Positions 1,602-59,381 of a stretch of 64,000 nucleotides of DNA are shown here, piece after piece (within the stretch, counting starts at the first letter, position 1; each line of letters begins with the position of its first letter). The DNA lies in contig CM074814.1 in assembly GCA_037447605.1 (NCBI GenBank), forward strand, positions 806,001 through 870,000, read 5' to 3'. This DNA comes from Zygnema circumcarinatum SAG 698-1b. Lineage: Eukaryota > Plantae > Zygnematophyceae. The position numbers and the translations under genes are program-made. The notes below the pieces were generated by a model. That model was not told the DNA's origin and did not search any database. It worked only from the letters and a program-made list of their open reading frames with translations.

Positions 1602-2958
1602 TATGAAGCCTTCCTTATAAGCCCTTTCAGAGAGAACGGTTCCGACTTTCATCGGCGGAAGAGCTCCAGCGGACCAAGGAGGAGGGCACAAGAGGCGAAG
1701 CGAAATTCGGAAGTTCAAGTACAAAACGGCTGGAAAAAGGCCGAGGGCGCGGTCTCCATACCCAACGCTTTGCGCGCTGTTGAACTGTAGTTCCACTCAC
1801 GTTCAACAAGACTGTAACGGAAGCAGCGAGCAAGCAGTGAAATATCCCAACGTTTGGCCACGTGGGCGCTGGCAAGGGGGATGTCTCAAAAGATATGCAG
1901 ATTTGGTCGAGATCGAAATGAGTAACATTTTATACGTCAAGGGGACCGAGAACGTACTGGTTTCGAAAGAAATTCACTAGCGAGACCCCTACGATTAGCT
2001 CTACCGTACATGTAAAAAAAAGTGTCAGCCGCGGTTCAATGATGACGACGAGTTCTCATGTTGACCGTCCGATCAACTCACTTTTGAACATTTAGCCGTC
2101 GGATTTAGCGGCGCCTCTCGCCTAATCCAATGAGGAGGCGACACGAGGTTACTATAAGCCACCGACTACTCCGCCAGTCTGTCTCCACTTTGTCCTCTGG
2201 CGGCCTTCCTGTCTTTTTCTCGGCCAGTGGACTAGCCGTACAGATATGACATTTTTGATGCCGACAAAATCTTGTTCGTATGTACTGTACCAGTCGCTGT
2301 GTCGATATTCGATTGATAACTACAATCTTGTCGTTTCTGTGTCGGTGAATTGTCGGTTTGGAATCCGCGCCGCAGACAGACTGACCGGCTGGTCAAAAGC
2401 CAAAACCATACTGATTTTTTGTCGGTTTTTTGACAGTAAGTCTTTGATTTGTTTGGCTGACGTGCTCGTTCTGATTGCCAATATGGTACTTTTTTGTCGT
2501 GTAAGTTTGCCGGTCCTTATAGTTTGTCGGGCGGCGGCCGATAAACCACCGATTCCTGTCACATACGACAAACGTATCCGCCCGGCTCCGCCGCATTACG
2601 CAAGACGTCCGTACGGTATGCTAATGACACAATGTGCCAGCTGGTGATATAGGCTAGTTTCAGATTTGGGACGTGCCGTTAGACTCAATTGTGCCATTTA
2701 GAGCGACCTTTCGGGCAGTAGTCCCAGGTCCTATTCGTATGATGCGCACGAGACGTTCCGTACGGTTAAGTTCGTACCATCCTTCTGGCGGGCGGCGGCT
2801 CCTGATTGGTAGCTGCAATTTTGGTCCAATCCGCGACTGCTCTGGTCCTGCAAGCGCCGGCGACAAGCCACGTGACATATGTCACGCGCGGTACTCCACG
2901 AAGACTTGGACGTTTGTCAATTTTCAAAAAGTTCCAGAAAAGCAGAGAGTTAATATTA

Positions 2959-3893
2959 GGGTAGTGATATTTCCACCCCTTTTTTGGATCCAAACACCCC
3001 TTCCCGGCCGGGCAGATTTCAAAAAGGATTAAAAACGGCAAATGCTTTTTTCACACCTTTTTGGAATCGATACCCACCCTCCATCGGCAGATTTTTTTTT
3101 TGCGAAACAAGGAAATAACCCGTCACCCCATTTTGAATATCCCGCCTACCTGAATTTTTTTTCACGCGTGCGGTCAATCGTAGCCGTCGATTCCCTCGCA
3201 GATCGTAACACGGCAGATCACTATTTGCTCTGCAGGCGGGCTCGGTCACAGAGAATGGCAAGTGCCCACGTATCCCGTCAAACTTGTCTCAAAAGTTTGT
3301 CCGTACAAATGTCGTACGGACGCAACTTTGAGGAACCCAATATTTCGTATATTGAGAGCTTGGACCAATCAAAGTTTTCCACGTCAAAAGTTTAACACGT
3401 GGCAGATGTTGATTGGCTGAGAGCTGACAATGACACGAGATCTCGGGCCTAGGGACGCGCCTACTCGCACGTGCGATCCACTCGTGGGCGCTTTCCATTC
3501 GCTAAGATCGAGCCCGGCTGCAGATCGAACGGTGATCTGCAGTGGTGCGATCTGCGAGGGAAATCGACAGATGCGATTGACACACACGTGTGAAGGACGG
3601 ACACCCGCGTACGATCTCGTGGGGGACGGATCTTCCGCTCCGAGCGGATTCGGGCAGGCAGATATTTCTTTCCCTCAAAAAAAAATTTCAGGGAGGCGGG
3701 ATACAGTATTCCAAAATGCGGTGACGGGGTATCATTTTCCTTGGTTAGCAAATAAAATCAGCCGACGGAAGAAGGTGGGTATCGATTCCAAAAAGGTGTG
3801 AAAAGAGCATTTTCTGTTTTTAATCCCTTTTGAAATCTGCCCGGCCGGGAAGGGGTGTTTGGATCCAAAAAAGGGGTGGAAATATCACTACCC
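2959..3893. mobile_element. Non-autonomous foldback/MITE-like DNA element with long terminal inverted repeats, flanked by TA
   Basis: Left end GGGTAGTGATATTTCCACCCC... (2959) is the reverse complement of the right end ...GGGGTGGAAATATCACTACCC (3893). About the first 70 bp match exactly, and similarity continues for ~200 bp (2959-3160 vs 3680-3893) with further inner IR blocks. TA at 2957-2958 and 3894-3895. No coding capacity. Confidence 0.88.
3365..3416. promoter_or_regulatory. Palindromic double CCAAT-N9-CCACG module inside the foldback element
   Basis: CCAAT caaagtttt CCACG (3365-3383), 14-nt spacer, CGTGG cagatgttg ATTGG (3398-3416). Confidence 0.7.
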
Positions 3894-4316
3894 TAATTTT
3901 AAACTAGTTCTCGTTGTTTCCAGAAGAAGGAGCGTCGTCACAAAGTGCTGCTTTCGAATGAACTACCGAAGTGAATCCCTCTACAATAATTTGAAGATTG
4001 AGAAGAAGCCTGAATTGGGGGGAAAGGTCAGACATACAAAGCCTTTCATACATATGATTTTCAAAAACCAGAAACGATTTTGCTCAAGATTTATTAGAAA
4101 AAGCGAACCAACATTCCTGCTTTCATAAGCAAATTTCTCACAGTAGCAGGCCAAGTCTGACTCTTCCTAATGCCCCAGACTTCAAATGTTACCCAAGTCA
4201 ATTCGGTGACAAACATTGTTCGAACCATGCATGTCCACACGTTTGCACATTGTAAACCCTAAAAACCCGAAAAACCCTAAAAACCCTAAAGACAGCCCAC
4301 AATGAGCTGGCTCTAA

Positions 4317-5037
4317 TCACAGAGAGTGAATGCTCCGAATGCGGTCCACTGCGTCCCGAACGAGCACAGACGGCTCATCGTACAAGAGCGCGGGGTTGTC
4401 CACTTTGTTCGAAATGCTCGGCTCTCCCAACAAGGCTCGAAAGGTGTCCGCAACACTATTGGAGAGGGACCTCAAGTCGTAGCCACCTTCCAAGAAGAAG
4501 ACGATTCTTCCCCCGCACAGCTGCTTAGCAAGCCCATGCAGTGCGCATGTAAGCCGATGGTACGTTCCAGTAGTGAATTGGAGGCCAGCAAGAGGATCTT
4601 GGAAGTGCGCATCATATCTGAAACATAGAGAAGCACAGTTTCAAGATACAGCACACACTTCGGTAATATAGAACATCTAAGACTTTACAATTGCTGTCGT
4701 GGGATAGTTTTCCCAAAGAAGCAGTTATACGCAAGAGTATGAAGTCCTGAAGGCTACATATAAAGAAGAACTATCTACCAAGTGCTAAGCATGACATAAA
4801 GCTTCTTCCCTCACACAGCTACTCACCCGGCTGAGACCAAAATAATGTCCGGATTGAACCTCTGCGCTGCCGGGGCAATCACTTCATCCATCACTACCGC
4901 CATAGCCTCATCTCCCGCTCCTCCCGGTAAAGGCAGATTCAAAGTACAACCCTCTCCAGCTCCATCTCCAACCTCCTCCATCTTCCCTGTCCCAGGATAG
5001 CTCCCAACCTGCCCACCAACAAAGGGCTCGCCATATT

Positions 5038-5068
<31 letters not shown>

Positions 5069-7237
5069 TCCCTCTCCCTCTCCNNNNNNNNNNTCTCCCT
5101 CTCCCTCTCCCTCTCCCTCCCCCTCTCCCTCTCCCTCAGCGAGATAGTGGCTACCTCAGTCTCTGCCCAAACAGAACAGAGAAGCGCAGTTTGCCGGTTT
5201 CAGTGAACCTCACTTGATGTGTCGAGAGAAAGAATATGTCTGGGTCTTCAAAGAACATGTCATGCGTGCCATTGCCATGGTGCACATCGAAGTCGACAAT
5301 GAGCACCCTCTTCAAGCCATGGCGGATCTGCGCATGGCGAGCTGCCACCGCTATGTGGTCGATGAGACAAAACCCCATGGGGCCCCTCGGAATGGCATGG
5401 TGGCCAGGGGGCCGTACAAGGGCAAACCCGGCTGCTGATTGGCTTGAGCTTCCCCTTGAAGCTGCCACCTGGCAATGCAATGATGAAGGTCCAAATCAAC
5501 ATTGGGATCATGAATAAGGTCTCAGTTCGTGAGTTTCTGACATTCGCATTCTATAAAGGTATGGGGAGTGATAGTCGGAGGATAGATTGTAATCATCATC
5601 ATGATTTGGAGAAGTGCCTCTGTCGGTTTACTTACCACTGAATCAACGACTGCCATCCCTGCTCCTGCTGCAAGCATGCACTCGCTGTACGACTGCTCCC
5701 ACCAAAACAATGTTGACAACAAAACAACGACAACAAAACAATGATTAACAATGTAGTTAAGCGTGAAAGATAGCTCCTTCCCCCCTCCGCTATCCCTTTC
5801 GCTCTATTCTTTCCTCACCCAATGCTATTTTTTCACTCCTCTTTCTGACTCTCTCTCCCCGTCGCTCCCATTCTGTGTATCCCTCTCGAACCTCTCCTGG
5901 TCTTCCTGCTTCCCTCATTCGAAACCCGGCTGGCTACATAATGCAGCAGATGAACACGATTGATATACATCATAGAAGGGGAAGAAGAGTTCTCCGCTTG
6001 ATGCACAATAGTGGGGGTCAGGCAATTCTGCTGCTTATGCCTCTTATTTAACTTTCAACTTTCCCTCTTTGGCAACATCTCCCATGCAAAAGTGGCGGCT
6101 TACAGACACTGTGGCATATGTGGGCCCGCTTTGCTCGATGAGGATGAGGCCTTCCTCAGCAGCCGTCTCCATGGCCTGCAAACAAACAATCTAGCAAGAA
6201 CTCAGAACAGGAAATTCTTCAGGACTACGGAATTGCTGAATATAAAGTCCTGTTACAAGATAAAAAACGGCATAAAAAAGGAAAGATCAAATCAGAGGGA
6301 TGTTCTCCAGAGATGAACCCGAATGCAGAAAGTCACAGAAGTGGCACAATTAAACAAAAAAAAAAAAAAGGTGCACAGTATAACCAAAACGGAAGTAGAG
6401 ACTAGAAAGGGACGTCATGCCTTTTCCAGGCCTTTAATATAACCTGCAGTATGAACGGCTGCCACGTCGTCAGGACTGGCTGCTGCAAACGCCTTGAGCT
6501 GTACTACTTCTCGCCCACGAAACTGCCCAACTCCAACAAGCCAAAAGTTACCAAAAACTACCATCACCACTGTAATCAGTAAGCTCCCGAAAGAGGGTAA
6601 AAGCATATTAGAGGCAAAAGACTACGTAAGACCTTTCTTCATGGCTTTTCGTTTTCTTTCTTTCCATTCTATTTTCTTTACTTTCATCTCTGTATACTCA
6701 CCTGCTCTGTCAGCTTTGAATCTTCCAAGGCTTTCAAAATTGCAGGGACTCTCTGGTTGCTCTCTGGATGGCCCTCCTGCCATTTTCCAATCCTCGAATA
6801 TCACCATTCGTCAAGGAGTTGTAAAGAAAAGTATAGCCTCTTGCGGCTCTAAAATTGCACTTTAAAGCCTTATTTCAGCAAAGCTTAGCCCCATTAAAAA
6901 GCCAAAATGGTTCTACCTGATTATGGCCCATTGAAGGAGCTGCCGCATATATGACCCGTGAATCATTCAAGTCGCTTAAAGGAATCTCCAGCTGCCCCTC
7001 CTCTCCCTCCCCTTGTGCTCTCCCTTCTATGGCCACTCGTGAGCAAACCCTAAAAGCTCGCTTTTGGGAGCCGCCAGTAACCCTAGAGGAAAACTGCGTC
7101 CGTGGACTGACATAAAAGGCCAAATTAGGTTTTGATGGCCGCCCTGCAGCAGATTTAGGGGCGCTTAAATTCGAAATTTTCGGACAGCATTTAAGTAGAG
7201 AATGCAGCCTTATGCAGGGGGAGCAGTAGCAGGCCAT
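4317..7237 (-). CDS. HDA14: Class II histone deacetylase, HDA14-like (plastid-type), 8 exons
   Basis: Exons 7237-6917, 6776-6702, 6522-6421, 6175-6104, 5692-5636, 5468-5214, 5008-4827, 4617-4317 splice in frame. Motifs [36 protein letters not shown], and C-terminus [10 protein letters not shown]...RSIHSL* as in plant HDA14. Transit-peptide-like N-terminus; intron 3 has a GC donor. Confidence 0.93.
5041..5137. repeat. (CCCTCT)n hexamer microsatellite with a 10-N assembly gap, in an HDA14 intron
   Basis: Direct reading; N at 5084-5093. Confidence 0.85.
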
Positions 7238-7660
7238 GTTCTTCCGCAAGAATCTGCCACATCGCAGCAAAATTCAATGCATAAGCCAAGAAAAAGGGGT
7301 TTGATCAATCGGCAAGAGGGCGTTCAGAGAGGGCATAAACGCAGCAGTCAGAGGTGACTGCAACAACCTTCTTGGCAATTGCATTTATCTTCTTATTCTT
7401 TACCTTAATTTATCTTTTACTTACCGTTTTTTTAATGATGAACCATGCGAGTGATGCAACCCTAATGAGGAGACACAGCGCAAATTTGGCAACAATGATG
7501 GGAAGCTGACCGTTGTTGCACCTGCTGCACTAAGCCGTTAAGAGCACCACCAAGGCTGAGAATACTCGAAAAGAGTAACAGCTTTACTGATTCTGTGCCG
7601 CTATGCGCACACCGTTGAGGGCCACGCACGCATCACGTTTTATAATCACTCACGCATATG

Positions 7661-7714
7661 CCAATGGAGGCATGCCACGTGTAAATTTGCATACACGTGG
7701 TGCCTTTTCATTGG
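7661..7714. promoter_or_regulatory. Palindromic double CCAAT-N9-CCACG module in the divergent HDA14/PUR4 promoter
   Basis: CCAAT ggaggcatg CCACG (7661-7679), 16-nt spacer, CGTGG tgccttttc ATTGG (7696-7714). Lies between ATGs at 7237 (-) and 7991 (+). Confidence 0.75.
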
Positions 7715-7990
7715 TCAACTTTCTTTTCTAGCTCGCTTTGGCGACCGGCGTCGTGCGTCTGTACACGACCGTACGGTGCGGCAATAGCCTGCCACGTGGA
7801 TCCGAAAATCTATTGCGACTCGATATAATCGACAAGTTTACAGTTGTCCCTACATCGATATACGACATAATATCGATCCGAGATAGTGCGGAAACTATCG
7901 CGATACGAACCTGCATACAACGGTAACTTTGAAGGCGTCGTCGCCCTCCCTCCGTCTCTCTCGCTTGCGCTCTCCCACCTCTTAGCAGCC

Positions 7991-23897
<15,907 letters not shown>

Positions 23898-32979: not shown

Positions 32980-34102
32980 TGTGAAGCTGCTTTATACAAT
33001 AGTAAGTACTAAGCCAACTGCAGCAAAAATGTTGCAGATTAGGAATGATAAAGCAGTATGTCGGCGGCCTGGGGAACCACTGCCAATTCAGGTAGGCTTC
33101 ACTGTTCCATGTAGCAAGAAATCAAGGCTGCAGGACAAAACAGAAAAATAAAGACAGTGAGAAACGACGATGGGAGAAATATCAACAGCTTCCCTCAATC
33201 AGCAGAGTTGTATCGAGATGCAATCCTTCTATATCACAGATGGCATGCGCTCGTCAGAGCTTGACATTTCATAATATATCCGCCGCATGACATAATCTCG
33301 GGCTCCAAAGAAATCAAGCAACAAGGAAAATCGAAGTGCGCCTGTGCGTTCACGCGGCACATTACTCAAGCAGGTGGATTCAACTACAGAAAAAAAAAAA
33401 AAAAACCATAAAATCGATGGCCAGCAAAAAAAAAAGGCTCGGGTACTCGATTATCAGCTTAAACAAGCCTCCCATTCCACGGAAAACCTGAACCTTTCTA
33501 TCTCCATCAAAGACCTGCACAATACCTCACAACACGCAAAAAGAAGGCGTAAGCAGACACCTGGAGCTTTCTCTCACCTCCTGCAAGCAGACACAGCTCC
33601 GGTATATTCCACAAGCAAGATCCTCCCGATTCACATCCAATCAGTCTCAACCATCCAGTAATGTGATCTTAAGAAAGCCGCTCTTCCCTGCTCTCCTCTC
33701 CTCTCCTTCTCCCTCCCTCTCTCCCTCCCTCTCTCCCTCCCTCCACCCCCCCTCCTTGGAGCATGCTCACATCAAAAAGCAGCTTGTTTCTCAAAATGCA
33801 CCTGACTGCCAGTACCTCAACCGGGGACGTGGGAACTCTATTAGAGGACATTAGTAAAGCGAACTTGGACAAAGGTACTCGCATCACGGACGCCATTTGG
33901 CCTTTCTCAACTTTTGCAACAGTGTCAAACTTGAGAGGATTTCACTACGGGAAAAAAACGTGGAAATCAAAAATAATAATCAGTACACATTTGTGTTGCG
34001 GATCATGTTTATAAAGTACTGATTCTATTTTCGAGGCGTACCGGTAATTTGAAAACCCTCTACGCCGACGGTTTTGTACTTTATGCGCGGCTGGGACCAG
34101 AG

Positions 34103-34155
34103 CCAATGAGGGTTTGCCATGTCAACACTACTACCACGTGGCAGTTACCGATTGG
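34103..34155. promoter_or_regulatory. Palindromic double CCAAT-N9-CCA(C/T)G module upstream of the orphan gene
   Basis: CCAAT gagggtttg CCATG (34103-34121), 15-nt spacer, CGTGG cagttaccg ATTGG (34137-34155). Confidence 0.7.
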
Positions 34156-34272
34156 TCGAGAATACAGGTCGCCGAGGCGAAAGGAACGGTTTAAGAATTT
34201 TTTGGGCGTTGGCGGACGCCAGTTTCCGTGAAACGGACGCGTGGGCGGACGTTCGTACATTACCGATACCTC

Positions 34273-34375
34273 CAGTTTGCCAGGAAAAACCGACTTTGCC
34301 AGGAAAAACCGAGTTTGCCAGGAAAATCCGAGTTTGCCAGGGAAAACCAAGTTTTCCAGGAAAAACCGAGTTTGT
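34273..34375. repeat. 19-bp minisatellite, ~5.5 tandem copies (consensus GAGTTTGCCAGGAAAAACC)
   Basis: Units start at 34273, 34292, 34311, 34330, 34349 and 34368 (partial); no spacers between them. Confidence 0.9.
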
Positions 34376-34886: not shown

Positions 34887-36903
34887 TCAGCTGACCGACT
34901 GCCCCACTGCTGACTTGAGCTCTGTGGCTAACTCCGACGCAGGCTGCACTTTCCCATTCACCTTCACAGAGGTGACTTTCACCGCTTCCTTATCACTTCC
35001 CACAAGGAACAGCCCTTCGTCTGTAACTACCCCAGGCTCAGCCGCCCCTTCCACAGCCACCTCCACTCCCTTCAAGCCATTCTTATCATAAGTCTCAACA
35101 AGAACGGAGCCAAATAGCCCCACAACTTCCCCATTTATGATGGTCCAAGCACCGGGAAATCTGTCATTCCCTCTTATGAAGTTATGGATCTGCTCCGCCG
35201 TCTTCGTGAAGTCGACCTTTGCCAGCTTTGGGTCTTTCCACAAGGGGTCATATGAGGCTCCTTCCTCGGGCTGAGGGATGCGCGGCGCTTTACCGCTCGC
35301 GATAAGGTCTACAGCCTCCCCCATGGCCTTCACTCCCTCCGGGAAGAGGAACCTCTTGTCTGAACATAAGAAGCATAGGATCTTTAGTCGTAAGGTCGAC
35401 CAAACAAACTGAAACGTTCTCATTCCCTCGTTTCTAAAACTCTAAATTTCATTAAGCCTCTCTACTGAGTCTGAATTGAGGTACACAGCCACTTCAGCAA
35501 AGGGAAAGCACTTTCATACTCACAGATTGAGTTAACAGTATCATTTGGTTCCACGTCACACTCCTTTTGCAGCAGAATGGAGCCTGTGTCCAATCCGTCG
35601 TCGGCCCAAAAGACTGTCAACCCGCTCTTCTTGTCACCCTCCATGAGCGTCCAGTTGATGGCAGAAGCTCCCCTGTGGCGAGGCAGAAGAGAGGGATGGT
35701 AGATGATGGAGCCGTGCTTGCAGGCATCAGAGACCTGGCAGGAGAGGGAAGGAGGAGGGAGACTAGTGCAGGATGGGGTGCGAGATCCAAGGACCGGATG
35801 GGGACGACCAGAAGTCAAACGCTAAATGAAAACATGTGAATAATGTGAAAAATCCTTTCTTATCATGTCATGTTCATCCATTCTGCGTTCACGAGTATGG
35901 TTCAAGCATTGGCTGGAATTTGAACCAAACGATAAAATGTACTGTGAATTAATAGAAAAAACCATTACATGGCCACGCCGTGGGACCTTATTTTCCTGTT
36001 ACATGCCCCGATGCTGAAAAAGTGCCAGATTATGTCTAAACATGTGAGGAATGAAGTCAGAGCAGAAGCCATGTACCTCCATGGGAATGAATTGGGTGAC
36101 AAAGGCCAGCACATTCAGTTCCGCACCCACACTTTTGTACTGCTCCAATACCTCCGGTAGCACGTGGCCACCATCCTTCTTTAAAGCCTTCCATCGCACT
36201 ATTTTAAATACCTGAGCATAACAGAAGAAATGCAAAAAGAATTCAAAATAGTTTAATGAGCGACCTGGTTTTGATTTATGAGAACAATCATGACACTGCG
36301 TATGATCGGCTTAGATTCTCTTTCATGGCGACTCATTTAAAATGGAAATGCAGGAACACCCAAAGGGAAAGAAAAAGCGGGGAAGGGGGGGGGGGGGCGG
36401 GGGCAGATGAAAGAATCCATTGACAGGAGCCGAGCGAAGCTGGAAAGTGTGGAGATGGCAAGCGAGAGGGAGAGAGAAAAAAAAATGACGAAAGAAATGG
36501 TAATAAAAAGCAACAGCAAGGGAATTACAACAAATCATTAAAATACAATCTTACAGTAATAATCAAACTATAACAATGACCCAGACGGGGATGCTAACAA
36601 AGAATACTTTCCAAAATGACCCAAGAAATGAGCGTACTCAAACATAAAAGAGAGGAAAATCTAGAAAGCGCAATCCTCCCTTCCTCCCTCAACTCTCTGC
36701 CTCCTGCGTCTTTAACGCAAATGCTCCCTATTGCCTCCTCCTCTCACCTTGTGCCCGTTCGCACGTGCGGCTGCCGCCAGGGGGTCCTCCTTCCCCGCGC
36801 TGTCCGGCACGCTGAACACGCCCACAACCTCGTGGCCTCGCTCCAAGAGGTGGCGGTACACCTCCGCTCCAAACGCGGACTGCCCGAACACCGCCACACG
36901 CAT
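34887..36903 (-). CDS. Stand-alone 10-formyltetrahydrofolate hydrolase-like protein (ALDH1L/FDH N-terminal formyltransferase-fold domain), 4 exons, ~324 aa
   Basis: Exons 36903-36748, 36211-36077, 35734-35524, 35359-34887, all GT-AG and in frame. They give [72 protein letters not shown] and [11 protein letters not shown], nearly identical to the animal ALDH1L motifs as recalled. Ends in TGA with no ACP or ALDH domain. Confidence 0.9.
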
Positions 36904-37116
36904 TGCTGCTGCGCTTCTTCCTGAAATTCAGTCCCTCTCTTTCACTCTCTCCTCTCTCCTCTCCTCACTCTCTTCTCTCTCCTCACTCTCTCTTTCTCCC
37001 TCTTTCTCTCTTTCTCCCTGGCGCTCGTTCTCTCGCAAGTCTCCAACACCTGCAAATGCCGCACCACAAACCTCCAGAGTGCGGGCTGCACCGAGGGTCC
37101 CTTTTGTAACTTTGCA

Positions 37117-37243
37117 CCAATCACAGAACGCCACGTCAGCATTTTCGCTTACATGGCAAACGGTAATTGGCCGTACGGGGACCCTCCGCCAATCATAAAA
37201 CGCCACGTCATCACTTTTTACATACGTGGCAGACGGTAATTGG
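37117..37243. promoter_or_regulatory. Two tandem palindromic double CCAAT-N9-CCACG modules upstream of the ALDH1L-like gene
   Basis: Module A 37117-37170 (CCAAT cacagaacg CCACG / CATGG caaacggta ATTGG); module B 37189-37243 (CCAAT cataaaacg CCACG / CGTGG cagacggta ATTGG). Confidence 0.75.
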
Positions 37244-37972
37244 TGTCATCGGAACTTCATAAAATTCCTCGCGGCCCTCGAGGGGAGGTTGGAGGGCGGG
37301 TCGCCCCGGGACAGAGGTTAATCAGAGTATGCCACGTGTGCACAAGTGATGACATAGCATGCTGTGATTAGTCCAGCGTGGATACATTTTCACTCTAAAC
37401 AGTGGAGCATGTAGATTCAGAAATCTCCCAAACAAATTTCCATAAATCTGCTCTCCAGAACGGCCCCCTCGGGACATTTCCATCCGGAATTGTCCGTTTG
37501 AAAGGTTTAGGTTTTCAGTATCAGGGTAAGGATTTTTTAGATGTCAGATATGAAGGTTGCGAAGTAATGCGTGCAGCTGTTAGATGTGGCTCAACGCAGA
37601 CGAAGCCTAGGGAGGTTAAGGGGTTTTTAGGGGTACAAAAGGGTGCAGAATGGTTTACTGATATACATGGACACCAGGAGCAACAATCTCTTTCCAAGCC
37701 CAGAGATTTCTGAAGATCTTTTACGTCACTTAAACAACCATGCTTGCTCGGTCAGATCAGGGACACTTTCTGGAGATCACAAACAACATAATGTGTTTTC
37801 CTAGCTGGCAAGAAAAAAGGATCTTTTATTATTGTCATGGGCCTCTCAACGACGACCCAAAAGAGAACCACCTTCCCTAAACCTGCCCTCCCCCTTCTCA
37901 TTCCCCCCCTCCCTTCCCCTGCTGCACACCTCCCAACCCTTGGAGTGCTACAGCCCGTCGTCAAAACAAACC

Positions 37973-40900
37973 CTAACTGTGCTTAGGGTTCACATAGAGC
38001 GCATCCACAAGCCCCAGCCCAAGCGTCTTCATGTCGTCCAAAACAGCGCCTACGTTCACAACGGCTCTCAGTTCACCTCCATCGGCATTGGCATCCGCCT
38101 CTTTCTGAAGACATACACATGTTCCAAGAATGCGTCTCAGATTCGCCATGAACTCTTAAGATCCCAACAACCGAGAAAACCTACAAACCCTACAATCCGA
38201 CGAAATTGACTCGATGTCTGAAAACATAACTACTTGCCAAGTACGTCAATAACCAGAGCATACTAATGCCTTCAATGACAGTAATGGCAACATAGTTCAA
38301 CAATTGCGTTAGGGTTTGACACCATGGAGAGACGAGAGACCTGCTTTTGGAGGGGGAGCTGCAAATTGGCGAGAGCAGGTGTTAGGGTCACCGGCTCGCC
38401 CACATGAGGCCGCCAAGAGAGGCCAATCGCAGCCCCACCAATGGGGTCATGCCAGAAATCCGCAACACTCGCAAAGCGGCTCTGCATCAGCAAGAGCACC
38501 AACTTATGAAATCGTTATTACTTTTGAGTGAGAGTGGAAAAGCGACAAATCAGGAGGCCTGTAGTAGAGATTTGATTAAGGGAAGGCTTTCCATCTGTCT
38601 GTGAAGAAACGTCAAGAAATCATCTGCAAAAATTACGATAATACCACTCTAATATGGCTCCCCTCTGAGACGTAGGTCCATACCAAACTGGAGGAATTTT
38701 CATCTTCCTAACTTCATTCCGTTTCACCGAAAACAGTAACGACCGTAAGAAATTTCTGTACGGAAGTTTGGACGATTCCCCACTAACTTGCTCCCCACTT
38801 ATGGCGTCAAGCTGATAATTGCCAGTATATCCCTGACGATATTGTACTACCATCTTAGAGGGGTGCTACTACTGTACTTGGAACCAGGGATTCGTGTTCG
38901 GCAAAGCCCACCTTCAACTGCCGGAGAAAGATGGCTGCGGGATCAAATCCGATAAGTACAGCCCGTTGAGCAGCGTGTGCTCCAGCACTCAGAATCGCCT
39001 TGGGTATATATGCGAGTTCGCCAGACTCTGACCTCTTCTTCTGCTCAGATGTAGACACTGTACACAAGGCGAAAACATAGATAAATAAACATACCAAATC
39101 AACAAAACCTCGTAAATTCTAAGGGAAGGCTTGTAGAATTGGACGAGAGGTTTACACCCTGAGGGTATGCTCTGAAGACCATTATCTTGACCTAAGCTGC
39201 CATTTCTGTTTTTACAGAAAATCTGTCTCTTGTCAAAACCTGCCAGTCGAGCAGTTCTAAAGCATAAAAGCCCCACATAAAAAAAATCTACTGTAGGTCA
39301 GCTGAAAACCAACTTAGGAACAGGCAAATGTGGAATTGTCAGTCAGATAGACTATATGGCGAATTTATGAAGGTCACAACTACTGATCACTGTGCAGACG
39401 TCCTGACAACAAAACGGAGAGAAAAAAACTCGGCTCGATTCAAAACATAAAGACTGTAACTAGCATTTCGTAAACGATATGTCCTTACTTTGCAAAAGAT
39501 CACGTGGATGAAACAAAACTCGTCCAGGATGAGGCAGGGCATCCATCCGCAGAAGAATGACAGCGTCGTTGATGTTGAGAGGGGTACAAAAGAGAGACTG
39601 GATCCCATCAATCAACCAACAGTTTTCTCAACAAAACATTCATACTCCCCCACTCATGAAAATCAAGTATTATCATTCTGCACAAGCAAATCAGTTCTTT
39701 CTAATGTACATCATAACAAAAACAGAATAGAAAAGAACTTCAGCCATAACAAACAAAGGACAGCAAGGTAAAGGCATTATGTTACCCACCTGCCATTTGT
39801 CGGACTCCTCGAAGTTGATTAACCGTGCTAATAGAGTAGCTGAGCTTGATGCAAAAGCTCTGATCCGTTTCAGGGACTGCCCACAAGACACAGAATCTAA
39901 ATTAACGAACACCTCCTACAAGCTGAACCCTGATCCTGCAGATGAACGCCACCAGTCTCCACTACAAGAAATCATATCTGGAAGGCTAACCAAAGAGGCA
40001 TATCTGTTCGACGAATGAAAAGAGATTCAAGTTTCATCAGGAAAACAACGAATGAGAGGAAGGGCCGGCTCTCTCGGAGAACCACCCTCCTCAAGTGACC
40101 CTAAAAACGAATGAATGCACTAGAGATTCCAGAGTAGGCGATTGTTGATTGGAAGCGGTGAATCATCAGAAATGTATGTTTACTCTGACACATGTCCAGT
40201 TTGACAAATAAATTGAGTCCAGATTGCCAGCACTAATCTCACCTCAATTGATGGACCTTTTTGTGTCCACACACTGTGATCTTGATCATATGGAGTAGCA
40301 ATGAACATGGCTGGACCGCCATTGCTCAACCGTTCTGAAGTCCCCTTATTTTTCAACTGAGTTAGGACTTTTTGTCGCAATGCAACAAAGTGGTCCTGCA
40401 AAGGTGCAAGGAAGGGCACATCATAGAAAACGTGAGATGACGCTTACAATACCTAAACTTGCCATACCATACAAGTAATAAATCAGGAAGGATTGCTTGC
40501 TGCTCTAGCAAGGAAGATAGGTGACCATGTGGAAGGTCTTACATGAATCGATTGCCGCTGTGAAGCTGTTAGTGTATTATTTATGTCCACGATCAGGGGA
40601 AGAGCATCCCAATTATAGCCACTCAGAAGACGCAGAAACCTGCATTGCCGAATTGAGTATTCAAGATGTAAATGTGTCAGAATCAGTCTTGTGCACCTCA
40701 GCCTCCTCAACAGCATACAGTTATCAGTCAAATACTTGGGAAGCCATGGCAGGGACTACAGTTCATTCGATGACAAGCGATGGTGACAACCAAGCAGGAG
40801 TTGACGACGAGTGGTAAAAAAAAGAGGCTTCATGTTTACTACGCTGTAAGTGAAGCAACCTCATTATAAGTCTTGGATAGGGCAAGGATCATAAAGGTAA

Positions 40901-43900
40901 CACAGACGCAAACACGGAACAATTGCTGTTCAAGCACTTGAACACAAACATAAGCACACACAATCATTGCCTACTGATAAAGTGGTTAATCAGATTGCAG
41001 TGCTGGATTTAATCACTTCTACAGCATTGCTAACATACAAACAATGACGAATAAGGTAATGTCCAAGTGGGATGCAGGAAGTATCGATTTATGGAGGCAT
41101 ACAAGGGAGGATTTGAAGTACAAAAGGCAAGGCATGTAGAGCATTACCCCTTCGTCCATCTATCAGCAAGCAAATATTGGTAAATTTCAACGAAATCCAA
41201 TAACAAAAGTGTGATGAAGCCACTCAGTTAACCGCATCATAGGCTCTACATGGTGTCACTAGTACACTCAGCCATAACTTATATCATCCATGTGGCCTCC
41301 ACCTCACTTCTGTAGGCAATATCGTGTGGCTTGATACCTCACAGCCATCTGAAAAACCTTCATCCTTGCTGGGTAATAATATCTTTGATGGGCATTCCGC
41401 AAGAAGAAGAAGAAAGAAGAAGCAAGAAGCCAGCATTACTCAACAAACACTGGAAGAACCTCACCTGAGGAATCCAGAGATTCGAGAACGTGGTACACTG
41501 AAAGGAGCCGAGAACGAGAATAGAGAAGCAACAAGTAGCTCAACCGCCTCTTCTTGAAGGGCTCCTCCAAACATGTGACACGCGACCCACCTCTTCGCCA
41601 ATCTGCTCCACGCCAGCCAGTGCACCTTTCAGCACTCCGTGTACATACACAAGGAAGGAGGGAAGGAGTGGGAGGAGGAGGTGACATGCACAATTAAAGC
41701 TAAAACCTATATGGAAGGTAATGTGACAACTAGACACGATAAAAAAAGTATCGGCTAGAAAACGCCTCACATCAATGGACACACAGTGAATGCACGAATG
41801 TCAAAATAAATCTGAATCGCAGTTTGGACTTAACATACTGTTCAATCATTGGCAACAATAATTTACTTACCGTGTTATGGGTGCGTAGAGTGGATGAGCT
41901 CCTTGTAGTCCGGACAAAACACTGCCATGAAAAACTCGCAAAACATAGTCTGTTTCCGGGCCTCCCTTCGGTATTGCCCTGTTACTGGGTAGAGATGGAG
42001 CTGAAGTACCTGAAGCAGTTATTTGTATTTCACCCCCACAACCACCAGCGACTGAAACTTCAAGGTCCGAAAAAAAAGGGTTGGGTTGCTCCATCCTCGT
42101 GATTCTTGACTCACGAAATCTCTACAGCTGTCAAACCGCCTTAAAACTAACTCTCAACTTCAATATCACAAAACAACGTGTGGACATTCATATTGCAGGC
42201 TGTTATGCTAAGCAAGTTGCAATGCCAGCTTTCGTTACAGGACACCCATGCACTCCATGAATGCGCCAGTGAAAGAAAAAATACTTGCCTTCTGCCTCTA
42301 GTGCAGAACGGTGAAGAAAAGTGGGGTCACGGTCATATGCCACTCGGAGTCGAAATGCGAAGCCATGCAGAAAAAGGTCAACAGTCTCTTCAGATGCAAC
42401 CACATACGCTCCTTCACTCTGCTCCAAGCTGCACCAAAAATTCTTCGGTAAAGGGAGCGCCTAAACTTGCCAAACTCTAAACGCTGGTTCATGAGTTTCC
42501 ACAAATGCACAGCTTTTGCACTGTCAAAAGGGGAAAAGGAAAGTCATTATCAAGAGAGACCAGCCTGCTCGAAATGGCAGACTATTCAGCAGTTTGTACA
42601 AGAGCATAACTAACCTTCGGGCAACCTTAAGGCAAAAGGCAAGCTTCGTTTTCTCAATGGCGATGGGATCATCAGGCCATTTGCCTGAACCCTCCAGCTG
42701 CTCAAGGAAGTACAACGATAATCGTAAGCAGCATATCAGAATGATAGGAAAAGGCTCTCCGCCAACCAAAGGAGACAAAAAAATTAACAGCTGTGGCTAG
42801 TTCACATGCATTCCATGCATTGCAAATCAATAATGATCGCAACCTAACATACCTAGACTGCTATGATGTTCATTTACTAGCAATTATATGACAAAAAAAT
42901 CGAAACACCTTGAGCCTCCAACAAATGATTGTCTCATATATGCCCATCCGACCAAATCGAGGAGCAGCAAGCCTCTGACTGACCTGAATTGCGACCTCAA
43001 GTGGCTCAACGCAGGCAGAAATCGCTTTGTTCTTTTTCATTAACTGGGTGGCATCTCCCATGGCTAGTGGATGAAGTTTTGGAGGGAAAGCGGCAGACTG
43101 ACGAAAGGCTGCAAACCAAACAGAAAGAAGTTTAGTTCGCTTTCTACGATTACTATGGCATCTTCAAACTTGCTGCGAGACCTGTTCGCGCTAAGCTACA
43201 CCAAACTTGATTAGGCAACCACAGGCCCTAGGTCAAAACAGAGCATTTTCGAACAAAACGGGAGGCAAAACGAGCAAACAATATTCGGGCTGAAAGAAAC
43301 CAACAGAAAAAATCCGGTGAGAAAACTCTTTTCTTTACTAAATTAGAAGCAGAAGAGACAGAGCATTAATCACTAGCTGTAACGGACTAGAGGCCAAAAA
43401 AAAACTCGAACGAATTACCAGAATTAAGTGGCTGAACTCCAACAATAGCCAACGGTAAATTTTGCATAGTCCTTAAAGACTTGGAGAGTTTCTCGAATCC
43501 CTCCAGCAGTTTAGGACTACTTTCCATGGGATCTGTTAGCCACAAACAGAAAACACAAGGAAAAAAAGGTCTTGCTCAAGCATATCATGTGGCCAACTCA
43601 GCCTGGCCTGCAGTTCCATAACCATTGTTCCATAGAATTCTCAAGAAGCAAAAACATAAAAAAAAATCCAGGAACATGTAGACGTTACAAGCACGGAAAA
43701 GTTAAAAAAAAAAACTCGCCAGACATGAATCATGGTCTCAAACAAATGTATTGCACATTTTGCTCAGAGTACAAGCACAGGTCAAGGCCTACAAGTAAGG
43801 CCTGCATAAAGGTGTTAGTTCACCCTGTAGGGATGTGCAAAGAAATGACACAATGACGCATCAGATTTGAATTTGTTGCTATGGCGTGTTCAGTCCTTAA

Positions 43901-46900: not shown

Positions 46901-49758
46901 TTGCCGAAGTAAAACACAAAACTCACCAATAAAGTCCATAACAACTCGGAATATCTGATAAGGTGTCATCTGCGGGCTCACTCGACTGCCCCCTGATGGT
47001 GTGCGAAGATGAGCGACGAGTATGGACAACAGAAAGCCATTGAACGAGTCAGGTCGAGAGTGAAAATCCCTTTGTCTTGCCCAGACCTGTAGAATAGCCC
47101 AAATCCCCATAAGATGAGAAAGTCAATACCTTAACCAACTGGATCCGAAAGACCAAAGCCAAGCTCACTTCATCAACAAAAGTTAAAAAAACAAATCCGA
47201 ATGCTCATGAGAGGCCACGCTAATGTGCTTCAACTTACAATGGGTCACAAAGTGGCCTAGTCACCTTCAAGAGTAGAACTGCATCGAAGAGAGCAGGGCA
47301 GGAGGAAATGTGACAGTGAAGCCAGTGCAGATGATCTTTCTGGCCAATATCTTCCAGAATACTTGCATTATAGTTTGGAGTGGCTAAGGCCTGGCCATCT
47401 GCAATCAATTCTAACTCCAAAAATAAGACAAGGGAGAGACTGAATGAAGGCCTACTGCTACCCCCTTTCAGAACTTGGCAAGAACGCATTCGCAAGCAAC
47501 TAAGAAATTTAGAATGTTGAAGAGGAGAACAACAATTGTCGAAATGGTACAGCACATTCCAGTGTCCATAAAATAGGGGCAGCCCACCATAGCCTCGTTT
47601 TACATGACGAACCGAACGTATTTGAAGAAGCAGCAGGTACATTCCATGAAAATCACACCTTTAGACTTGGCAGTTCGAACATTGTTGCGAGTTGGAACAA
47701 GTTTTGAGAGGTCGAAGGTGTTCAGGCCAACAGTAGCATGCACCCGGATTACAAAACTTGCAGTTGCTCCTGTATTGGTGGATTCTGCAAGAATAGTGCA
47801 GGTATACTTCAGCTCCAAGAGTTGGCACCTGAGCAATTCAGGAGCCAAACTTCTTAAGAAATATGGCAATGCGCATTGACGCCTCCATCAAGGCATGACC
47901 AGGTTGCGTTGAAAAGCGGAATAACGGTTGATCTTGAGGTAAACTTCATTTACAAAAATCACAACAGAAATGATAATACCTTCAAGAACATCAAAAACCA
48001 AATTGACAAGATAAGGATTCAAAATGGCGCATTGCGTCTGCAATGGAGGCTCGGCATCTGACAAAGACTAGCCGAAAATAATAAAAAAAGTGGCCATTGA
48101 CAAAAAACTTACTTGGTCGAAGGAGAAGTAAAGGCTTTCTCACATCACCACGAAATGTGCCCCACTTGATGTCCTCAAAGAGGTTACTGGCCGCTAAACG
48201 TTGGGATAAAGTTTGCAGATACATTGCACGTTTCACATGGTATCGATGGTTCAGGTAATCCTTCTCATGAAAACAGGCCTGAACAAATGAAAAACCAGAG
48301 TAAACAGAAACTGCTTCAATGAAATTTCATGAAACGCGATGAATCTGATTGGAAGAGAGATTGCCAAGGCTACAGAAACATTTTTTCTACAAATTCATGA
48401 CTGAACAAAGGCCAAAGAAGAAAGCAAACAGAGATGGAGCATACAGGCCATCACCACTGTAGTGCAACGTCCAAACCATTGCAAGCCGCACTGTTCATAA
48501 CTTCACAATTGACCTCAATCAGCTTAAGTAGGAAGGCTCATCCTATGAAGCCTCGTCAAGCCAGTTCATCAAGATACGAGCAACAATAGAACCAGTCATC
48601 CTCCAGCTGTCTGTGGCTCCATCTCCCTATCTCAAAGTCATTCTGGAATAAGAAAAGAAGCCTCATCCATAGCAATTTCCACTGCATGGCAATCGTGTGT
48701 TGCATCAAAAGTGTAAAAGAAACATCCTTCCACACCTGCAACTCAATCAACGAGCAGACAAACAAAATGTAAAAAAAATCATGCAAACCTTACCTTTGGA
48801 ATCTCCACAACAAGGTCTACATTCGCCTCCGGCTTTGCCACAGTTTGTAACATGAAACTTCCCACCACACTCACTGACGACGGCTTCGAAAATCGAAAGC
48901 TCAACTTCGAAGCTGGAACACCAAGGGCATTTGCGTATGCGACAGGAACGGCTTGATCCACCTGCAGAGGCAATCACAGAACATCAGCAAATCTCCAAAG
49001 ACAAGGCCATATTCAAGCAGTCTAGAAACGAAAAATCTATTGATGGTGTCAATTGAGGGTCCTTTGTCCTTACTCCATCTTGAATCGACTCCATACACGC
49101 TTTCGCTGAATGTAGAGCCTCTTCAACCACACTCAGCCTCTTGTAATCAACTGCAACCTCCTTCAGAAGCTCGCCGACCTGCAGAGGTGCCGCTTAAAGA
49201 GACTTAGTTCCAGCTAAAATTCAAAAAACGTGGATGAGCCACATTCTGTATATACAATTTCACATCAAACAAACTGAATACCACCACATTCGCAGGCTTC
49301 AAAAATATTATGAGAAACAGGACAATAGCCTTCACAATCCCGCTTTATTTACTTTATCAGCATCCCGTCCTCCCCGCAATGCAGAACAATTAAGGAGTGC
49401 GGACCTGCCAGTTATCCAAGCTCACCTGCAGCTTGAAAAGTGCCGATTTAAAGGTAGTCTTAACAGAAGCAAGCTCCTCTGCTGACTGCCGACCGGACTG
49501 CTTCCCTGCTGAAGTCCTCACATTTCCATTGAGATTAACCCTTGGCAAATTCAGTAAACCCCCTCCGCTCCCTGGTCTCTGCTCCAAAACATGTTCCTCC
49601 TCCTTTCCCTCCCTCTCCCCTCCCACATCACTGCCCCTCTCAGCAGCAAGCCGCTTCCTCTCCTTCTCCACGCCCCCCTCCACACCCTCCGCCAGTCCTT
49701 TCCTCTTCTTCCCGCCTTTCCTTGCCTGCACCACTCCCGGCCCGGCTGCAGCCGCCAT
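37973..49758 (-). CDS. NOL6: Nucleolar protein 6 / UTP22 (Nrap family), multi-exon
   Basis: Exons encode VVGSFMLQTVAKPEANVDLVVEIPK, CFHEKDYLNHRYHVKRAMYL, TPNYNASILED, DSFNGFLLSILVAHL, DETVDLFLHGFAFRL, IATPYDQDHSVWT, GFDP, FWHDPIGGAAIGLSW, and a last exon ending ...LGLGLVDALYVNPKHS* (TAG 37973-37975). Confidence 0.92.
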
Positions 49759-49852
49759 GGCTGCGCCGCTTCCCTACCCTCTCCTCCCACTCTTCCCCCT
49801 GCCCTTCACCTCTCAGCATTTGTCTATTGCAAACTAAATACAGAAAGGTTAT

Positions 49853-49904
49853 CCAATGGAAATTGACCACGTGTATAAAATTACACGTGGCGCCTTGTGA
49901 TTGG
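49853..49904. promoter_or_regulatory. Palindromic double CCAAT-N9-CCACG module upstream of NOL6
   Basis: CCAAT ggaaattga CCACG (49853-49871), 14-nt spacer, CGTGG cgccttgtg ATTGG (49886-49904); ~95 bp upstream of the ATG. Confidence 0.75.
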
Positions 49905-59307: not shown

Positions 59308-59381
59308 TGATTTGTGCCGGGCTCGAACCGGCGACCTGCAGCGTGTAAGGCTGACGTGATAACCAACTACACCAACGAACC
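59308..59381 (-). tRNA. tRNA-Val-TAC: tRNA-Val (anticodon TAC), with two stem mismatches
   Basis: GGTTCGT TG GTGTAGTTGGTTATCAC G TCAGC CTTACAC GCTGC AGGTC GCCGG TTCGAGC CCGGC ACAAATC A. Intact A and B boxes and T arm; mismatches C5:A68 and T27:C43. Confidence 0.82.

What the first reader, a model, noticed from the sequence alone, without database searches (positions are those of the whole stretch)
7661..7714. Recurrent palindromic 'double-ERSE' promoter module (CCAAT-N9-CCACG-N14-17-CGTGG-N9-ATTGG) upstream of unrelated housekeeping genes
Seen: six copies at 3365-3416, 7661-7714, 34103-34155, 37117-37170, 37189-37243 and 49853-49904. All 12 half-sites keep exactly 9 nt between CCAAT and CCACG (10 exact, 2 CCATG), while the spacer sequences themselves differ. 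Halves are always head-to-head with CCAAT outward and a 14-17 nt centre. With equal base frequencies, about 0.12 exact half-sites are expected in 64 kb over both strands. Five copies lie upstream of genes (the divergent HDA14/PUR4 pair, the orphan gene, the ALDH1L-like gene, NOL6). Known: CCAAT-N9-CCACG is the ER-stress element bound by NF-Y plus ATF6 in animals and NF-Y plus bZIP28 in Arabidopsis; these genes are not UPR genes, and I know of no description of a fixed inverted dimer. Inference: a lineage-specific, symmetric NF-Y/bZIP general promoter architecture suited to bidirectional transcription.
Basis: partly seen in the sequence, partly recalled or inferred. Interest (0 to 1): 0.85.

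Follow-up and report, generated by a model that had tools for sequence, protein, structure and literature searches.

The report
Mirror-image CCAAT/ACGT promoter module
A 52-55 base mirror-image pair of a known two-part DNA switch (a CCAAT box exactly nine bases from CCACGT) sits just upstream of several unrelated everyday genes in this land-plant-related alga, so here it looks like a general promoter building block rather than the ER-stress switch it is in animals and Arabidopsis.

Summary
The window holds 12 CCAAT-N9-CCA[CT]G half-sites, where 0.26 are expected by chance. All 12 are paired head-to-head into six dyads at the stated coordinates. The N9 spacing is absolute, and every half-site continues into an ACGT or ATGT core. 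The exact dyad occurs once in 596 Gb of prokaryotic genomes.

Five dyads lie in CpG-rich islands, 95-424 bp upstream of start codons of minus-strand genes: HDA14-like, a candidate orphan gene, an FDH-like gene (two tandem copies plus a decayed third) and NOL6. The sixth dyad is the axis of a 950-bp foldback element.

The flanks of CCAAT fit the NF-Y preference. Four of 12 cores are CCACGTCA, which favours a bZIP over a bHLH.

Orthologous NOL6 loci of five other streptophytes and one metagenomic eukaryote (214 kb) have no dyad, so the grammar looks lineage-specific.

My reading is a constitutive proximal-promoter module with ERSE-I geometry, probably bound by NF-Y plus an ACGT-binding bZIP. This is inferred, not shown.

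The scan has already reported this same module on many other pieces of this genome. I found no description in the literature I could search.

The parts
7661..7714 (.). Dyad module (54 bp) named in the finding: CCAAT-N9-CCACGTG, 16-nt AT-rich centre, CACGTGG-N9-ATTGG. It lies between the HDA14-like gene (minus) and a plus-strand gene start.
   Evidence: CpG observed/expected is 1.29, the 96th percentile.
3365..3416 (.). Dyad module (52 bp) at the axis of a foldback element.
2950..3902 (.). Foldback or MITE-like element of about 950 bp. The outer arms are 86-90% complementary, and identity decays towards the centre. A TTAA lies at both ends (2950-2953 and 3899-3902). It is either a target-site duplication or part of the inverted repeat.
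34103..34155 (.). Dyad module (53 bp; left half is CCATG), 207 bp upstream of a candidate minus-strand ATG at 33896.
   Evidence: CpG observed/expected is 1.40.
37117..37170 (.). Dyad module (54 bp; right half is CCATG), 214 bp upstream of the FDH-like ATG. It is the proximal member of a tandem pair.
37189..37243 (.). Dyad module (55 bp). It is a tandem duplicate of 37117-37170 (84% identical) and lies 286 bp upstream of the FDH-like ATG.
37318..37371 (.). Probable decayed third copy, with 5 of 22 specified positions mismatched.
   Evidence: Shuffles give 0-2 such hits per window, so this is weak on its own. Its adjacency to the tandem pair is the argument for it.
49853..49904 (.). Dyad module (52 bp; the centre contains TATAAAA), 95 bp upstream of the NOL6 ATG.
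49426..49758 (-). NOL6 (Nrap/UTP22) first coding exon. The ATG is at 49758 and a GA-rich leader lies between it and the module.
   Evidence: Sequence read. Nrap domain. Exons mapped down to 37985 with Mesotaenium NOL6.
36745..36903 (-). FDH-like (stand-alone formyltransferase) first exon. The ATG is at 36903 and the leader is GA-rich.
   Evidence: tblastn with P0001; sequence.
6918..7237 (-). First coding exon of the HDA14-like histone deacetylase. The ATG is at 7237, 424 bp from the module.
   Evidence: Hist_deacetyl domain in downstream exons.
7638..7644 (-). TATAAAA on the minus strand, 17 bp beyond the module edge on the HDAC side.
   Evidence: Sequence read.
7992..8250 (+). Plus-strand first exon with a transit-peptide-like N-terminus and a CT-rich leader, 278 bp from the module. 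Probably the start of PUR4.
   Evidence: PUR4 domains at 16537-18008 and 21447-21860. Skew switch at about 8 kb.
33816..33896 (-). Candidate first exon of the 'orphan' gene: an ATG followed by a GT donor. No homology support.
   Evidence: Sequence read. No Pfam hit for downstream ORFs.

Best explanation
The dyad is a proximal-promoter cis-regulatory module. Each half is a composite site with the geometry of the ER-stress element ERSE-I. It has a CCAAT box, most likely bound by the NF-Y trimer, exactly nine bases from GCCACGT[G/C]. That second part is an ACGT-core G-box or G/C-hybrid, most likely bound by a bZIP dimer that docks next to NF-Y.

Two such halves face each other across a 14-17-nt AT-rich centre. 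This puts two NF-Y complexes about 50 bp apart on the outside and two bZIP dimers 16-19 bp apart on the inside.

In this alga the module appears to act as a general, probably constitutive, activator and nucleosome-excluding platform placed just upstream of transcription starts of housekeeping genes. It does not look like a UPR-specific switch. New copies can arise by local tandem duplication and by foldback transposons that carry the module at their axis.

Shown: sequence anatomy, enrichment, exact spacing, position relative to start codons and CpG islands, absence at orthologous loci elsewhere, and one transposon-borne copy.

Inferred: the identity of the binding proteins, activity, and constitutive rather than stress-induced use.
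For: (1) Enrichment and geometry.
- 12 half-sites were found against 0.26 expected, with no shuffle reaching 12.
- The spacing is N9 only.
- All half-sites are paired head-to-head.
- The exact dyad occurs once in 596 Gb of prokaryotic DNA.

(2) Constraint pattern.
- The 22 specified positions are intact (0 or 1 mismatch) in six copies, while spacers average 3.4 of 9 identity and flanks share nothing.
- No intermediate-quality copies exist apart from one decayed neighbour.
- The tandem pair differs at 1 of 22 motif positions but at about 8 of 32 other positions.

(3) Promoter position.
- The proximal edge lies 95 bp (NOL6), 207 bp (orphan), 214 and 286 bp (FDH-like), 278 bp (plus-strand gene) and 424 bp (HDAC) from the start codons.
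- A relative's FDH-like mRNAs have 5' UTRs of about 200 nt. If that length holds here, the start site would sit just downstream of the module.
- The modules sit in CpG-rich islands, at the 87th-98th percentile, in a CpG-depleted genome.

(4) Factor inference.
- The CCAAT flanks match the published NF-Y preference (my knowledge of the NF-Y consensus RRCCAAT[C/G][A/G]). There is a purine at -1 in 10 of 12, C or G at +1 in 10 of 12, and A or G at +2 in 12 of 12.
- Four of 12 cores are CCACGTCA and two are ACGTA or ATGTA. These are not E-boxes, but they are classic bZIP G/C and G/A hybrids.
- ERSE spacing is known to mediate NF-Y/ATF6 cooperativity (stated in PMC3730095 and PMC5499772).

(5) Lineage specificity. 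There are no dyads and only 2 isolated half-sites in 214 kb of NOL6 loci from Klebsormidium, Closterium, Riccia, Sphagnum, Diphasiastrum and a metagenomic eukaryote.

(6) Notes from this scan report the same module near gene starts on many other pieces of this genome. These are leads, not independent proof.
Against: - There are no expression, start-site, accessibility or binding data, so function is inferred from sequence.
- Transcription start sites are not mapped in this species.
- At least one promoter in the window (AP3B; CpG island at 56.2-56.8 kb) lacks the module, so it is not universal.
- One copy is inside a foldback transposon with no verified gene start next to it.
- The centre spacing varies (14-17 nt), which argues against a rigid four-protein complex.
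- ER-stress inducibility has not been excluded.
- Cross-species absence rests on one orthologous locus per species. No close relative (over 75% protein identity) could be examined.
Confidence: 0.62

Rival explanations
1. The dyads are relics of foldback or MITE transposons whose palindromic centre happens to carry CCAAT-N9-CCACGT. The head-to-head pairing is simply the palindrome of the element. Their position near genes reflects an insertion preference for open promoters, not function.
For: The 3365 copy is exactly at the axis of a 950-bp foldback with 86-90% arms. A palindromic element would automatically turn one half-site into a head-to-head pair. Earlier scan notes say some copies elsewhere sit in small transposons that moved.
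Against: - The other five copies have no inverted-repeat arms within 600-700 bp on either side.
- They share no flank similarity with the foldback or with each other.
- Left and right spacers within a dyad are no more alike (2-5 of 9) than spacers of different dyads (3.4 of 9). Yet all 22 motif positions stay intact. That is the signature of selection on the motif, not of neutral decay.
- Even if the copies have a transposon origin, that is compatible with exaptation as a promoter.
Confidence: 0.12
2. The dyads are genuine stress-responsive ERSEs. A bZIP28/bZIP17/bZIP60-type factor with NF-Y induces these genes under ER or heat stress, and in this lineage the UPR regulon is simply much wider.
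For: The half-site is a perfect ERSE-I. Four halves extend to CCACGTCA, which is the reverse complement of TGACGTGG, the UPRE-type core. ERSE function is conserved between mammals and Arabidopsis (PMC5499772).
Against: - The neighbouring genes are a plastid-type histone deacetylase, a purine-synthesis gene, a folate enzyme and a ribosome-biogenesis factor. None is a chaperone, PDI or ERAD gene.
- The density is about one dyad per 10 kb here, and earlier notes describe it at most gene starts of other windows. That is far beyond any known UPR regulon.
Confidence: 0.1
3. The sites are read by other proteins. Possibilities are a bHLH on CACGTG, a CCT or HAP-like variant complex instead of canonical NF-Y, or one lineage-specific factor that recognises the whole dyad. 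The function could be something other than activation, for example an insulator, a nucleosome-positioning element or a methylation boundary.
For: Six of 12 cores are the palindromic CACGTG, which bHLH proteins also bind. The modules coincide with the edges of CpG islands. No binding data exist.
Against: - Six of 12 cores are not E-boxes.
- The CCAAT flanks fit NF-Y.
- The variable centre (14-17 nt) argues against a single rigid protein reading both halves.
- In human cells the NF-Y/E-box stereo-positioning puts the E-box on the other side of CCAAT, at -12/-11 (PMC3730095). The geometry here is therefore ERSE-type, not USF-type.
Confidence: 0.12

Closest known systems
ERSE-I (ER stress response element, CCAAT-N9-CCACG). 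Bound by NF-Y plus ATF6 in mammals and NF-Y plus bZIP28 in Arabidopsis.
   Same: The bipartite sequence is identical and the 9-nt spacer is strictly kept in all 12 half-sites. The GCCACGT extension fits plant ERSE and UPRE cores.
   Different: - Here the element always occurs as a head-to-head pair with an AT-rich centre.
- It lies at housekeeping, non-UPR genes.
- It is far denser than any UPR regulon.
- It is partly transposon-borne.
- Stress inducibility and the binding factors are untested.
Human NF-Y stereo-positioned composite modules: CCAAT plus E-box with USF or MAX; double CCAAT boxes with E-boxes between them; LTR12-borne copies (PMC3730095, PMC4889920).
   Same: - The principle is the same: NF-Y with a fixed-distance partner site.
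- Pairs of CCAAT boxes have CACGTG-type sites between them.
- Spread is by repetitive elements.
- The modules are used at many growth and housekeeping promoters.
   Different: - The human E-box lies at -12/-11, on the other side of CCAAT.
- Human double CCAAT boxes are 19, 26, 36 or 43 bp apart and are not described as a fixed inverted dyad.
- Here the partner site is 3' of CCAAT and the boxes are about 47-50 bp apart in inverted orientation.
Plant G-box/ABRE (ACGTGGC) elements and NF-Y-bZIP partnerships (bZIP28, ABFs, HY5, bZIP67; reviewed in PMC3602376).
   Same: The reverse complement of 9 of 12 half-site cores reads ACGTGGC, the strong G-box/ABRE core. NF-Y-bZIP cooperation is well documented in plants.
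   Different: Known land-plant cases are condition-specific (ABA, light, seed, UPR) and are not fixed palindromic dimers at housekeeping promoters.
Mouse CRELD2-ALG12 bidirectional promoter with an ERSE (PMC3091781).
   Same: An ERSE sits between two divergent genes, like the 7661 copy here.
   Different: That promoter is described as carrying an ERSE, not a mirror pair (I read only the title and abstract). It is ER-stress-inducible and is a single locus, not a genome-wide grammar.

Membership tests
ERSE-I | Sequence CCAAT-N9-CCACG with exactly 9 nt between the boxes | tested here: met
   Ten exact sites and two CCATG variants. The count is 12 at k=9 and 0 at k=8 or 10.
ERSE-I | Located in promoters of UPR genes (chaperones, PDI, ERAD) | tested here: not met
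   The neighbouring genes are HDA14-like, PUR4-like, FDH-like, NOL6 and an orphan.
ERSE-I | Transcription induced by ER stress through ATF6/bZIP28, dependent on NF-Y | not testable with these tools
   This needs tunicamycin or DTT RNA-seq and binding assays in this alga.
NF-Y CCAAT box | CCAAT pentamer with the NF-Y flank preference (purine at -1, C/G at +1, A/G at +2) | tested here: met
   The flanks fit in 10 of 12, 10 of 12 and 12 of 12 half-sites. The consensus is taken from my own knowledge of the NF-Y literature, so this is indirect evidence of binding.
bZIP ACGT element (G-box / G-C hybrid) | ACGT core with flanks compatible with bZIP binding but not restricted to the CANNTG E-box | tested here: met
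   There is an ACGT core in 10 of 12 and ATGT in 2. The base after the core gives ACGTG in 6, ACGTC or ATGTC in 4, and ACGTA or ATGTA in 2.
Foldback / MITE transposon | Long terminal inverted repeats around the module | tested here: inconclusive
   This is met for the 3365 copy only (arms 86-90%). It is not met for the other five.
Foldback / MITE transposon | Target-site duplication and multiple dispersed copies with shared flanks | tested here: inconclusive
   TTAA lies at both ends of the foldback, but TTAA is self-complementary and may belong to the repeat. There is no second copy of the foldback in the window, and the modules share no flanks.
Bidirectional-promoter element | Lies between two divergently transcribed gene starts | tested here: not met
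   This holds only at 7661 (HDAC minus strand, ATG 7992 plus strand). At 34103, 37117/37189 and 49853 the far side is the 3' end of another minus-strand gene.
Human NF-Y/USF CCAAT-E-box module | E-box 11-12 bp upstream of the first C of CCAAT | tested here: not met
   Here the ACGT core starts 16 nt downstream of the first C of CCAAT. PMC3730095 places the human E-box at -12/-11.

The most novel reading that the evidence does not exclude
In one streptophyte-algal lineage the ancient NF-Y/bZIP stress element (ERSE-I) has been repurposed as a symmetric 'double ERSE'. This serves as a default proximal-promoter platform for housekeeping genes. It is kept under strong selection at 22 positions with free spacers. 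New copies are seeded by foldback transposons whose palindromic axis generates the mirror pair. That would be a natural example of a transposon-distributed, orientation-independent synthetic-like promoter cassette.
Probability: 0.4. Interest if true: 0.75.

Novelty: new variant of a known kind. Interest (0 to 1): 0.6.

Why it matters
If the dyad is functional, three things follow.
- A cis-element regarded as a conserved stress switch from mammals to Arabidopsis can be rewired wholesale into a general promoter grammar in a close algal relative of land plants.
- It would give a compact 52-55-bp, orientation-symmetric promoter part for algal or plant synthetic biology.
- It would offer a clean system for studying how NF-Y-partner spacing rules, and possibly transposons, shape promoter evolution.

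It also matters for annotation. In this genome the dyad is a strong marker of gene starts.

Tried and rejected
- **Metagenome scan for the exact dyad.** It returned 24 contigs. About 22 belong to one repeat-like family in contigs of roughly 40% GC, with cores CCACGA or CCACGG rather than ACGT. No Pfam domain was found in 10 flanking ORFs. I judged this a different entity and dropped it.
- **Identifying the organism.**
  - The closest FDH-like proteins are a Logan transcriptome protein (SRR8128902-8) at 72% and a Spirogloea protein at 61%.
  - NOL6 is 44-54% identical to Mesotaenium, Spirogloea, Klebsormidium, the bryophytes and Closterium alike.
  - Cluster look-ups gave no species names.
  - The species therefore stays unidentified, and no close relative's genomic DNA was reachable.
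- **Aligning the relative's 5' UTR to the window upstream region.** Only the coding part aligns.
- **Looking for PUR4 N-terminal domains between 8.4 and 16.5 kb.** No Pfam hits were found in 10 ORFs.
- **Rfam scan of the window.** It found only one tRNA, so the modules are not promoters of known small-RNA genes.
- **bHLH/E-box reading.** Rejected as the main reading because half of the cores are not E-boxes.
- **USF-type geometry.** Rejected because the partner site is on the other side of CCAAT.

Full report
**1. Observation**

A search for CCAAT-N9-CCA[CT]G finds 12 sites in the 64-kb window, on both strands. Dinucleotide-preserving shuffles give a mean of 0.26 and a maximum of 2.
- Ten are CCACG and two are CCATG.
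- Each plus-strand site is followed 33-36 bp later by a minus-strand site. The 12 halves therefore form six head-to-head dyads of 52-55 bp, at 3365, 7661, 34103, 37117, 37189 and 49853, with CCAAT outward and no isolated half-site.
- The spacing is absolute. CCAAT-Nk-CCA[CT]GT occurs 12 times at k=9 and never at any other k from 0 to 13.
- The base after CCACG or CCATG is T in all 12, so the inner box is an ACGT core (ATGT in two).
- The base before it is G in 9 of 12, so the reverse complement reads ACGTGGC.
- The inner centre is AT-rich, about 69% against 53% for the window (counted).
- As an outside control, the exact dyad pattern occurs once in 596 Gb of bacterial and archaeal genomes.
- A relaxed scan allowing up to 5 of 22 mismatches adds only one decayed copy, at 37318-37371, next to the tandem pair. 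Copies are therefore either essentially perfect or absent.

**2. Not a simple repeat family**

I compared each module plus 500 bp on either side with the whole window by blastn.
- The only similarities are the motif itself (7674-7724 against 49842-49891), the tandem pair 37117/37189 (84% over 55 nt), and unrelated GA/CT microsatellite matches.
- N9 spacers match at 3.4 of 9 positions on average between half-sites.
- They match at 2-5 of 9 between the two halves of one dyad.
- Intact motif positions next to freely diverged spacers are what selection on the motif would produce.

**3. One copy is transposon-borne**

The 3365 copy sits on the axis of a foldback of about 950 bp (2950-3902).
- The outer arms are 86-90% complementary, and identity falls towards the centre.
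- Both ends carry TTAA. Because TTAA is self-complementary, I cannot tell a piggyBac-type target-site duplication from the end of the inverted repeat.
- I could not verify a gene start beside this copy.
- The other five copies have no inverted-repeat arms within 600-700 bp on either side.
- This agrees with the earlier scan note s1-400660, and with notes from other windows that some copies ride on small transposons.

**4. Genes and positions**

| Gene | Strand | Evidence | Start codon | Distance from the proximal module edge |
|---|---|---|---|---|
| Histone deacetylase, HDA14-like | minus | Hist_deacetyl domain at 4320-5495; first coding exon 6918-7237 | 7237 | 424 bp (module 7661) |
| Plus-strand gene, probably PUR4 | plus | Transit-peptide-like exon after a CT-rich leader | 7992 | 278 bp (module 7661) |
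| Candidate orphan gene | minus | ATG plus GT donor only, no homology support | 33896 | 207 bp (module 34103) |
| FDH-like (stand-alone formyltransferase) | minus | Four exons mapped with a 72%-identical protein | 36903 | 214 and 286 bp (tandem dyads) |
| NOL6 | minus | Nrap domain; 19 exon matches to Mesotaenium NOL6 from 49184 to 37985 | 49758 | 95 bp (module 49853) |

- A TATAAAA lies 17 bp beyond the 7661 module on the HDAC side.
- PUR4 domains are recognisable only from 16.5 kb on. The plus strand turns T-rich exactly at about 8 kb and stays so to about 22 kb. That skew fits one long plus-strand transcription unit, so the HDA14/PUR4 divergent pair is plausible but not proven.
- mRNA contigs of the relative species have 5' UTRs of about 200 nt for the FDH-like gene. 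If the length is similar here, the start site lies just downstream of the proximal dyad.
- The leaders between module and ATG are GA-rich in the mRNA sense at NOL6, FDH-like and the plus-strand gene.
- The genome is CpG-depleted (median observed/expected 0.60). All modules lie in CpG-rich patches at the 87th-98th percentile.
- The AP3B gene has a CpG island at its 5' end but no module, so the module is frequent but not universal.
- Only the 7661 copy lies between divergent starts. At the other three loci the far side is the 3' end of the next gene. Symmetry as an adaptation to bidirectional transcription is therefore not supported as a general rule.

**5. Which proteins?**

This section is inference.
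- The CCAAT flanks fit the NF-Y preference as I know it from the NF-Y literature. There is a purine at -1 in 10 of 12, C or G at +1 in 10 of 12, and A or G at +2 in 12 of 12.
- The inner cores are ACGTG in six halves, ACGTC or ATGTC in four, and ACGTA or ATGTA in two. Half of them are not E-boxes, but all are typical bZIP G-box, G/C-hybrid or G/A-hybrid sites. This favours a bZIP over a bHLH.
- The fixed N9 is the geometry that mediates NF-Y/ATF6 cooperation at ER-stress promoters. It is conserved in Arabidopsis (PMC3730095; PMC5499772).
- In human cells NF-Y is also stereo-positioned with USF or MAX E-boxes, and double CCAAT boxes carry E-boxes between them, partly on LTR elements (PMC4889920).
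- There, however, the E-box lies at -12/-11, on the other side of CCAAT. The algal half-site is therefore ERSE-type, not USF-type.

**6. Other species**

I fetched the NOL6 loci of Klebsormidium nitens, Closterium sp. NIES-67, Riccia fluitans, Sphagnum jensenii, Diphasiastrum complanatum and an unidentified metagenomic eukaryote.
- Together they make 214 kb, each locus with up to 10 kb of upstream sequence.
- They hold two isolated half-sites, both within the annotated NOL6 gene span, and no dyad. That is the chance level.
- The window's proteins are only 44-54% (NOL6) and 61-72% (FDH-like) identical to anything available.
- The FDH-like/NOL6 gene order is shared with Spirogloea muscicola: scaffold s35, 541699-543389 and 545349-553633, both on the minus strand.
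- The source is therefore a streptophyte alga whose close relatives I could not reach.
- The grammar looks lineage-specific.

**7. Literature**

Full-text searches found no description of a fixed inverted ERSE dimer or of ERSE as a general promoter element in streptophyte algae. The searches covered the motif with 'palindromic', with Zygnematophyceae, with bidirectional promoters, and with NF-Y/bZIP fixed spacing. The nearest precedent for an ERSE in a divergent promoter is the mouse CRELD2-ALG12 pair (PMC3091781; title and abstract only).

**8. Relation to earlier scan notes**

The same dyad has been reported by this scan on many other pieces of this genome; 61 notes matched 'CCAAT'. Several follow-ups reached the same reading. 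This window is one more instance of a genome-wide feature, not a new discovery within the scan. I scored it on what I tested here.

**9. Verdict**

- The best reading (0.62) is a selected proximal-promoter module with ERSE-I geometry, probably NF-Y plus an ACGT-binding bZIP. It is used at housekeeping genes, is lineage-specific, and is duplicated locally and occasionally carried by a foldback transposon.
- The rivals are neutral transposon relics, a genuinely expanded UPR regulon, and other binding factors or functions.
- Relative to the literature it is a new variant of a known kind.

Noticed in passing
L008-L031 (metagenome contigs; e.g. L012:5549-5601, L021:500-552): About 22 contigs of roughly 40% GC carry a related family of dyads. 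The form is CCAATCA..GCACCACGATCTGAGATCGCCGCCGTGGT....GATTGG, with similar spacers and different flanks. The cores are CCACGA or CCACGG, not ACGT. The Ga00561xx and Ga0209xxx contig names suggest to me gutless-worm samples, but that is from memory and was not checked. No Pfam domain was found in 10 neighbouring ORFs. This may be a dispersed repeat or a conserved animal promoter element.
   Followed up: partly
window 34887-49758, compared with Spirogloea s35:541699-553633: The stand-alone FDH-like formyltransferase gene lies directly downstream of NOL6, in the same orientation, both here and in Spirogloea muscicola (gene ids SM000035S13117 and SM000035S13121). This is conserved microsynteny.
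   Followed up: partly
window 19500-21150: This is a long pyrimidine-rich low-complexity tract (GC skew -0.49, AT skew -0.58) with ORFs of about 500 codons open in several frames. It lies inside the presumed PUR4 transcription unit. Similar GA/CT microsatellite stretches recur at about 12.7, 15.7, 16.7, 24.7, 31 and 33.7 kb, and in 5' leaders.
   Followed up: no
window 34270-34375: A tandem array of a unit of about 19 bp (CCTGGCAAACTCGGTTTTT-like) lies 120-220 bp from the 34103 module, on the side away from the candidate gene.
   Followed up: no
window 7755-7785, 34255-34265, 37170-37189, 49960-50020: GTAC and CCGTAC(G) motifs cluster next to the modules, with up to 5 GTAC in 400 bp against 1.1 expected. 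This matches the SBP-type GTAC clusters that other notes report in this genome's promoter islands.
   Followed up: partly
window 7985-7998 and 49751-49765: The plus-strand gene and NOL6 share the same start context, CAGCCATGGCGGC, after a homopurine or homopyrimidine leader.
   Followed up: no
window 56200-56800: The AP3-beta adaptin gene (exons 51699-56306, minus strand) has a CpG-rich 5' region but no CCAAT-N9-CCACG half-site, so not every promoter uses the module.
   Followed up: partly
window 59308-59381 (minus strand): A tRNA gene (Rfam, 56 bits) lies inside the strongest CpG island of the window (58.3-60.1 kb, observed/expected up to 1.9).
   Followed up: no
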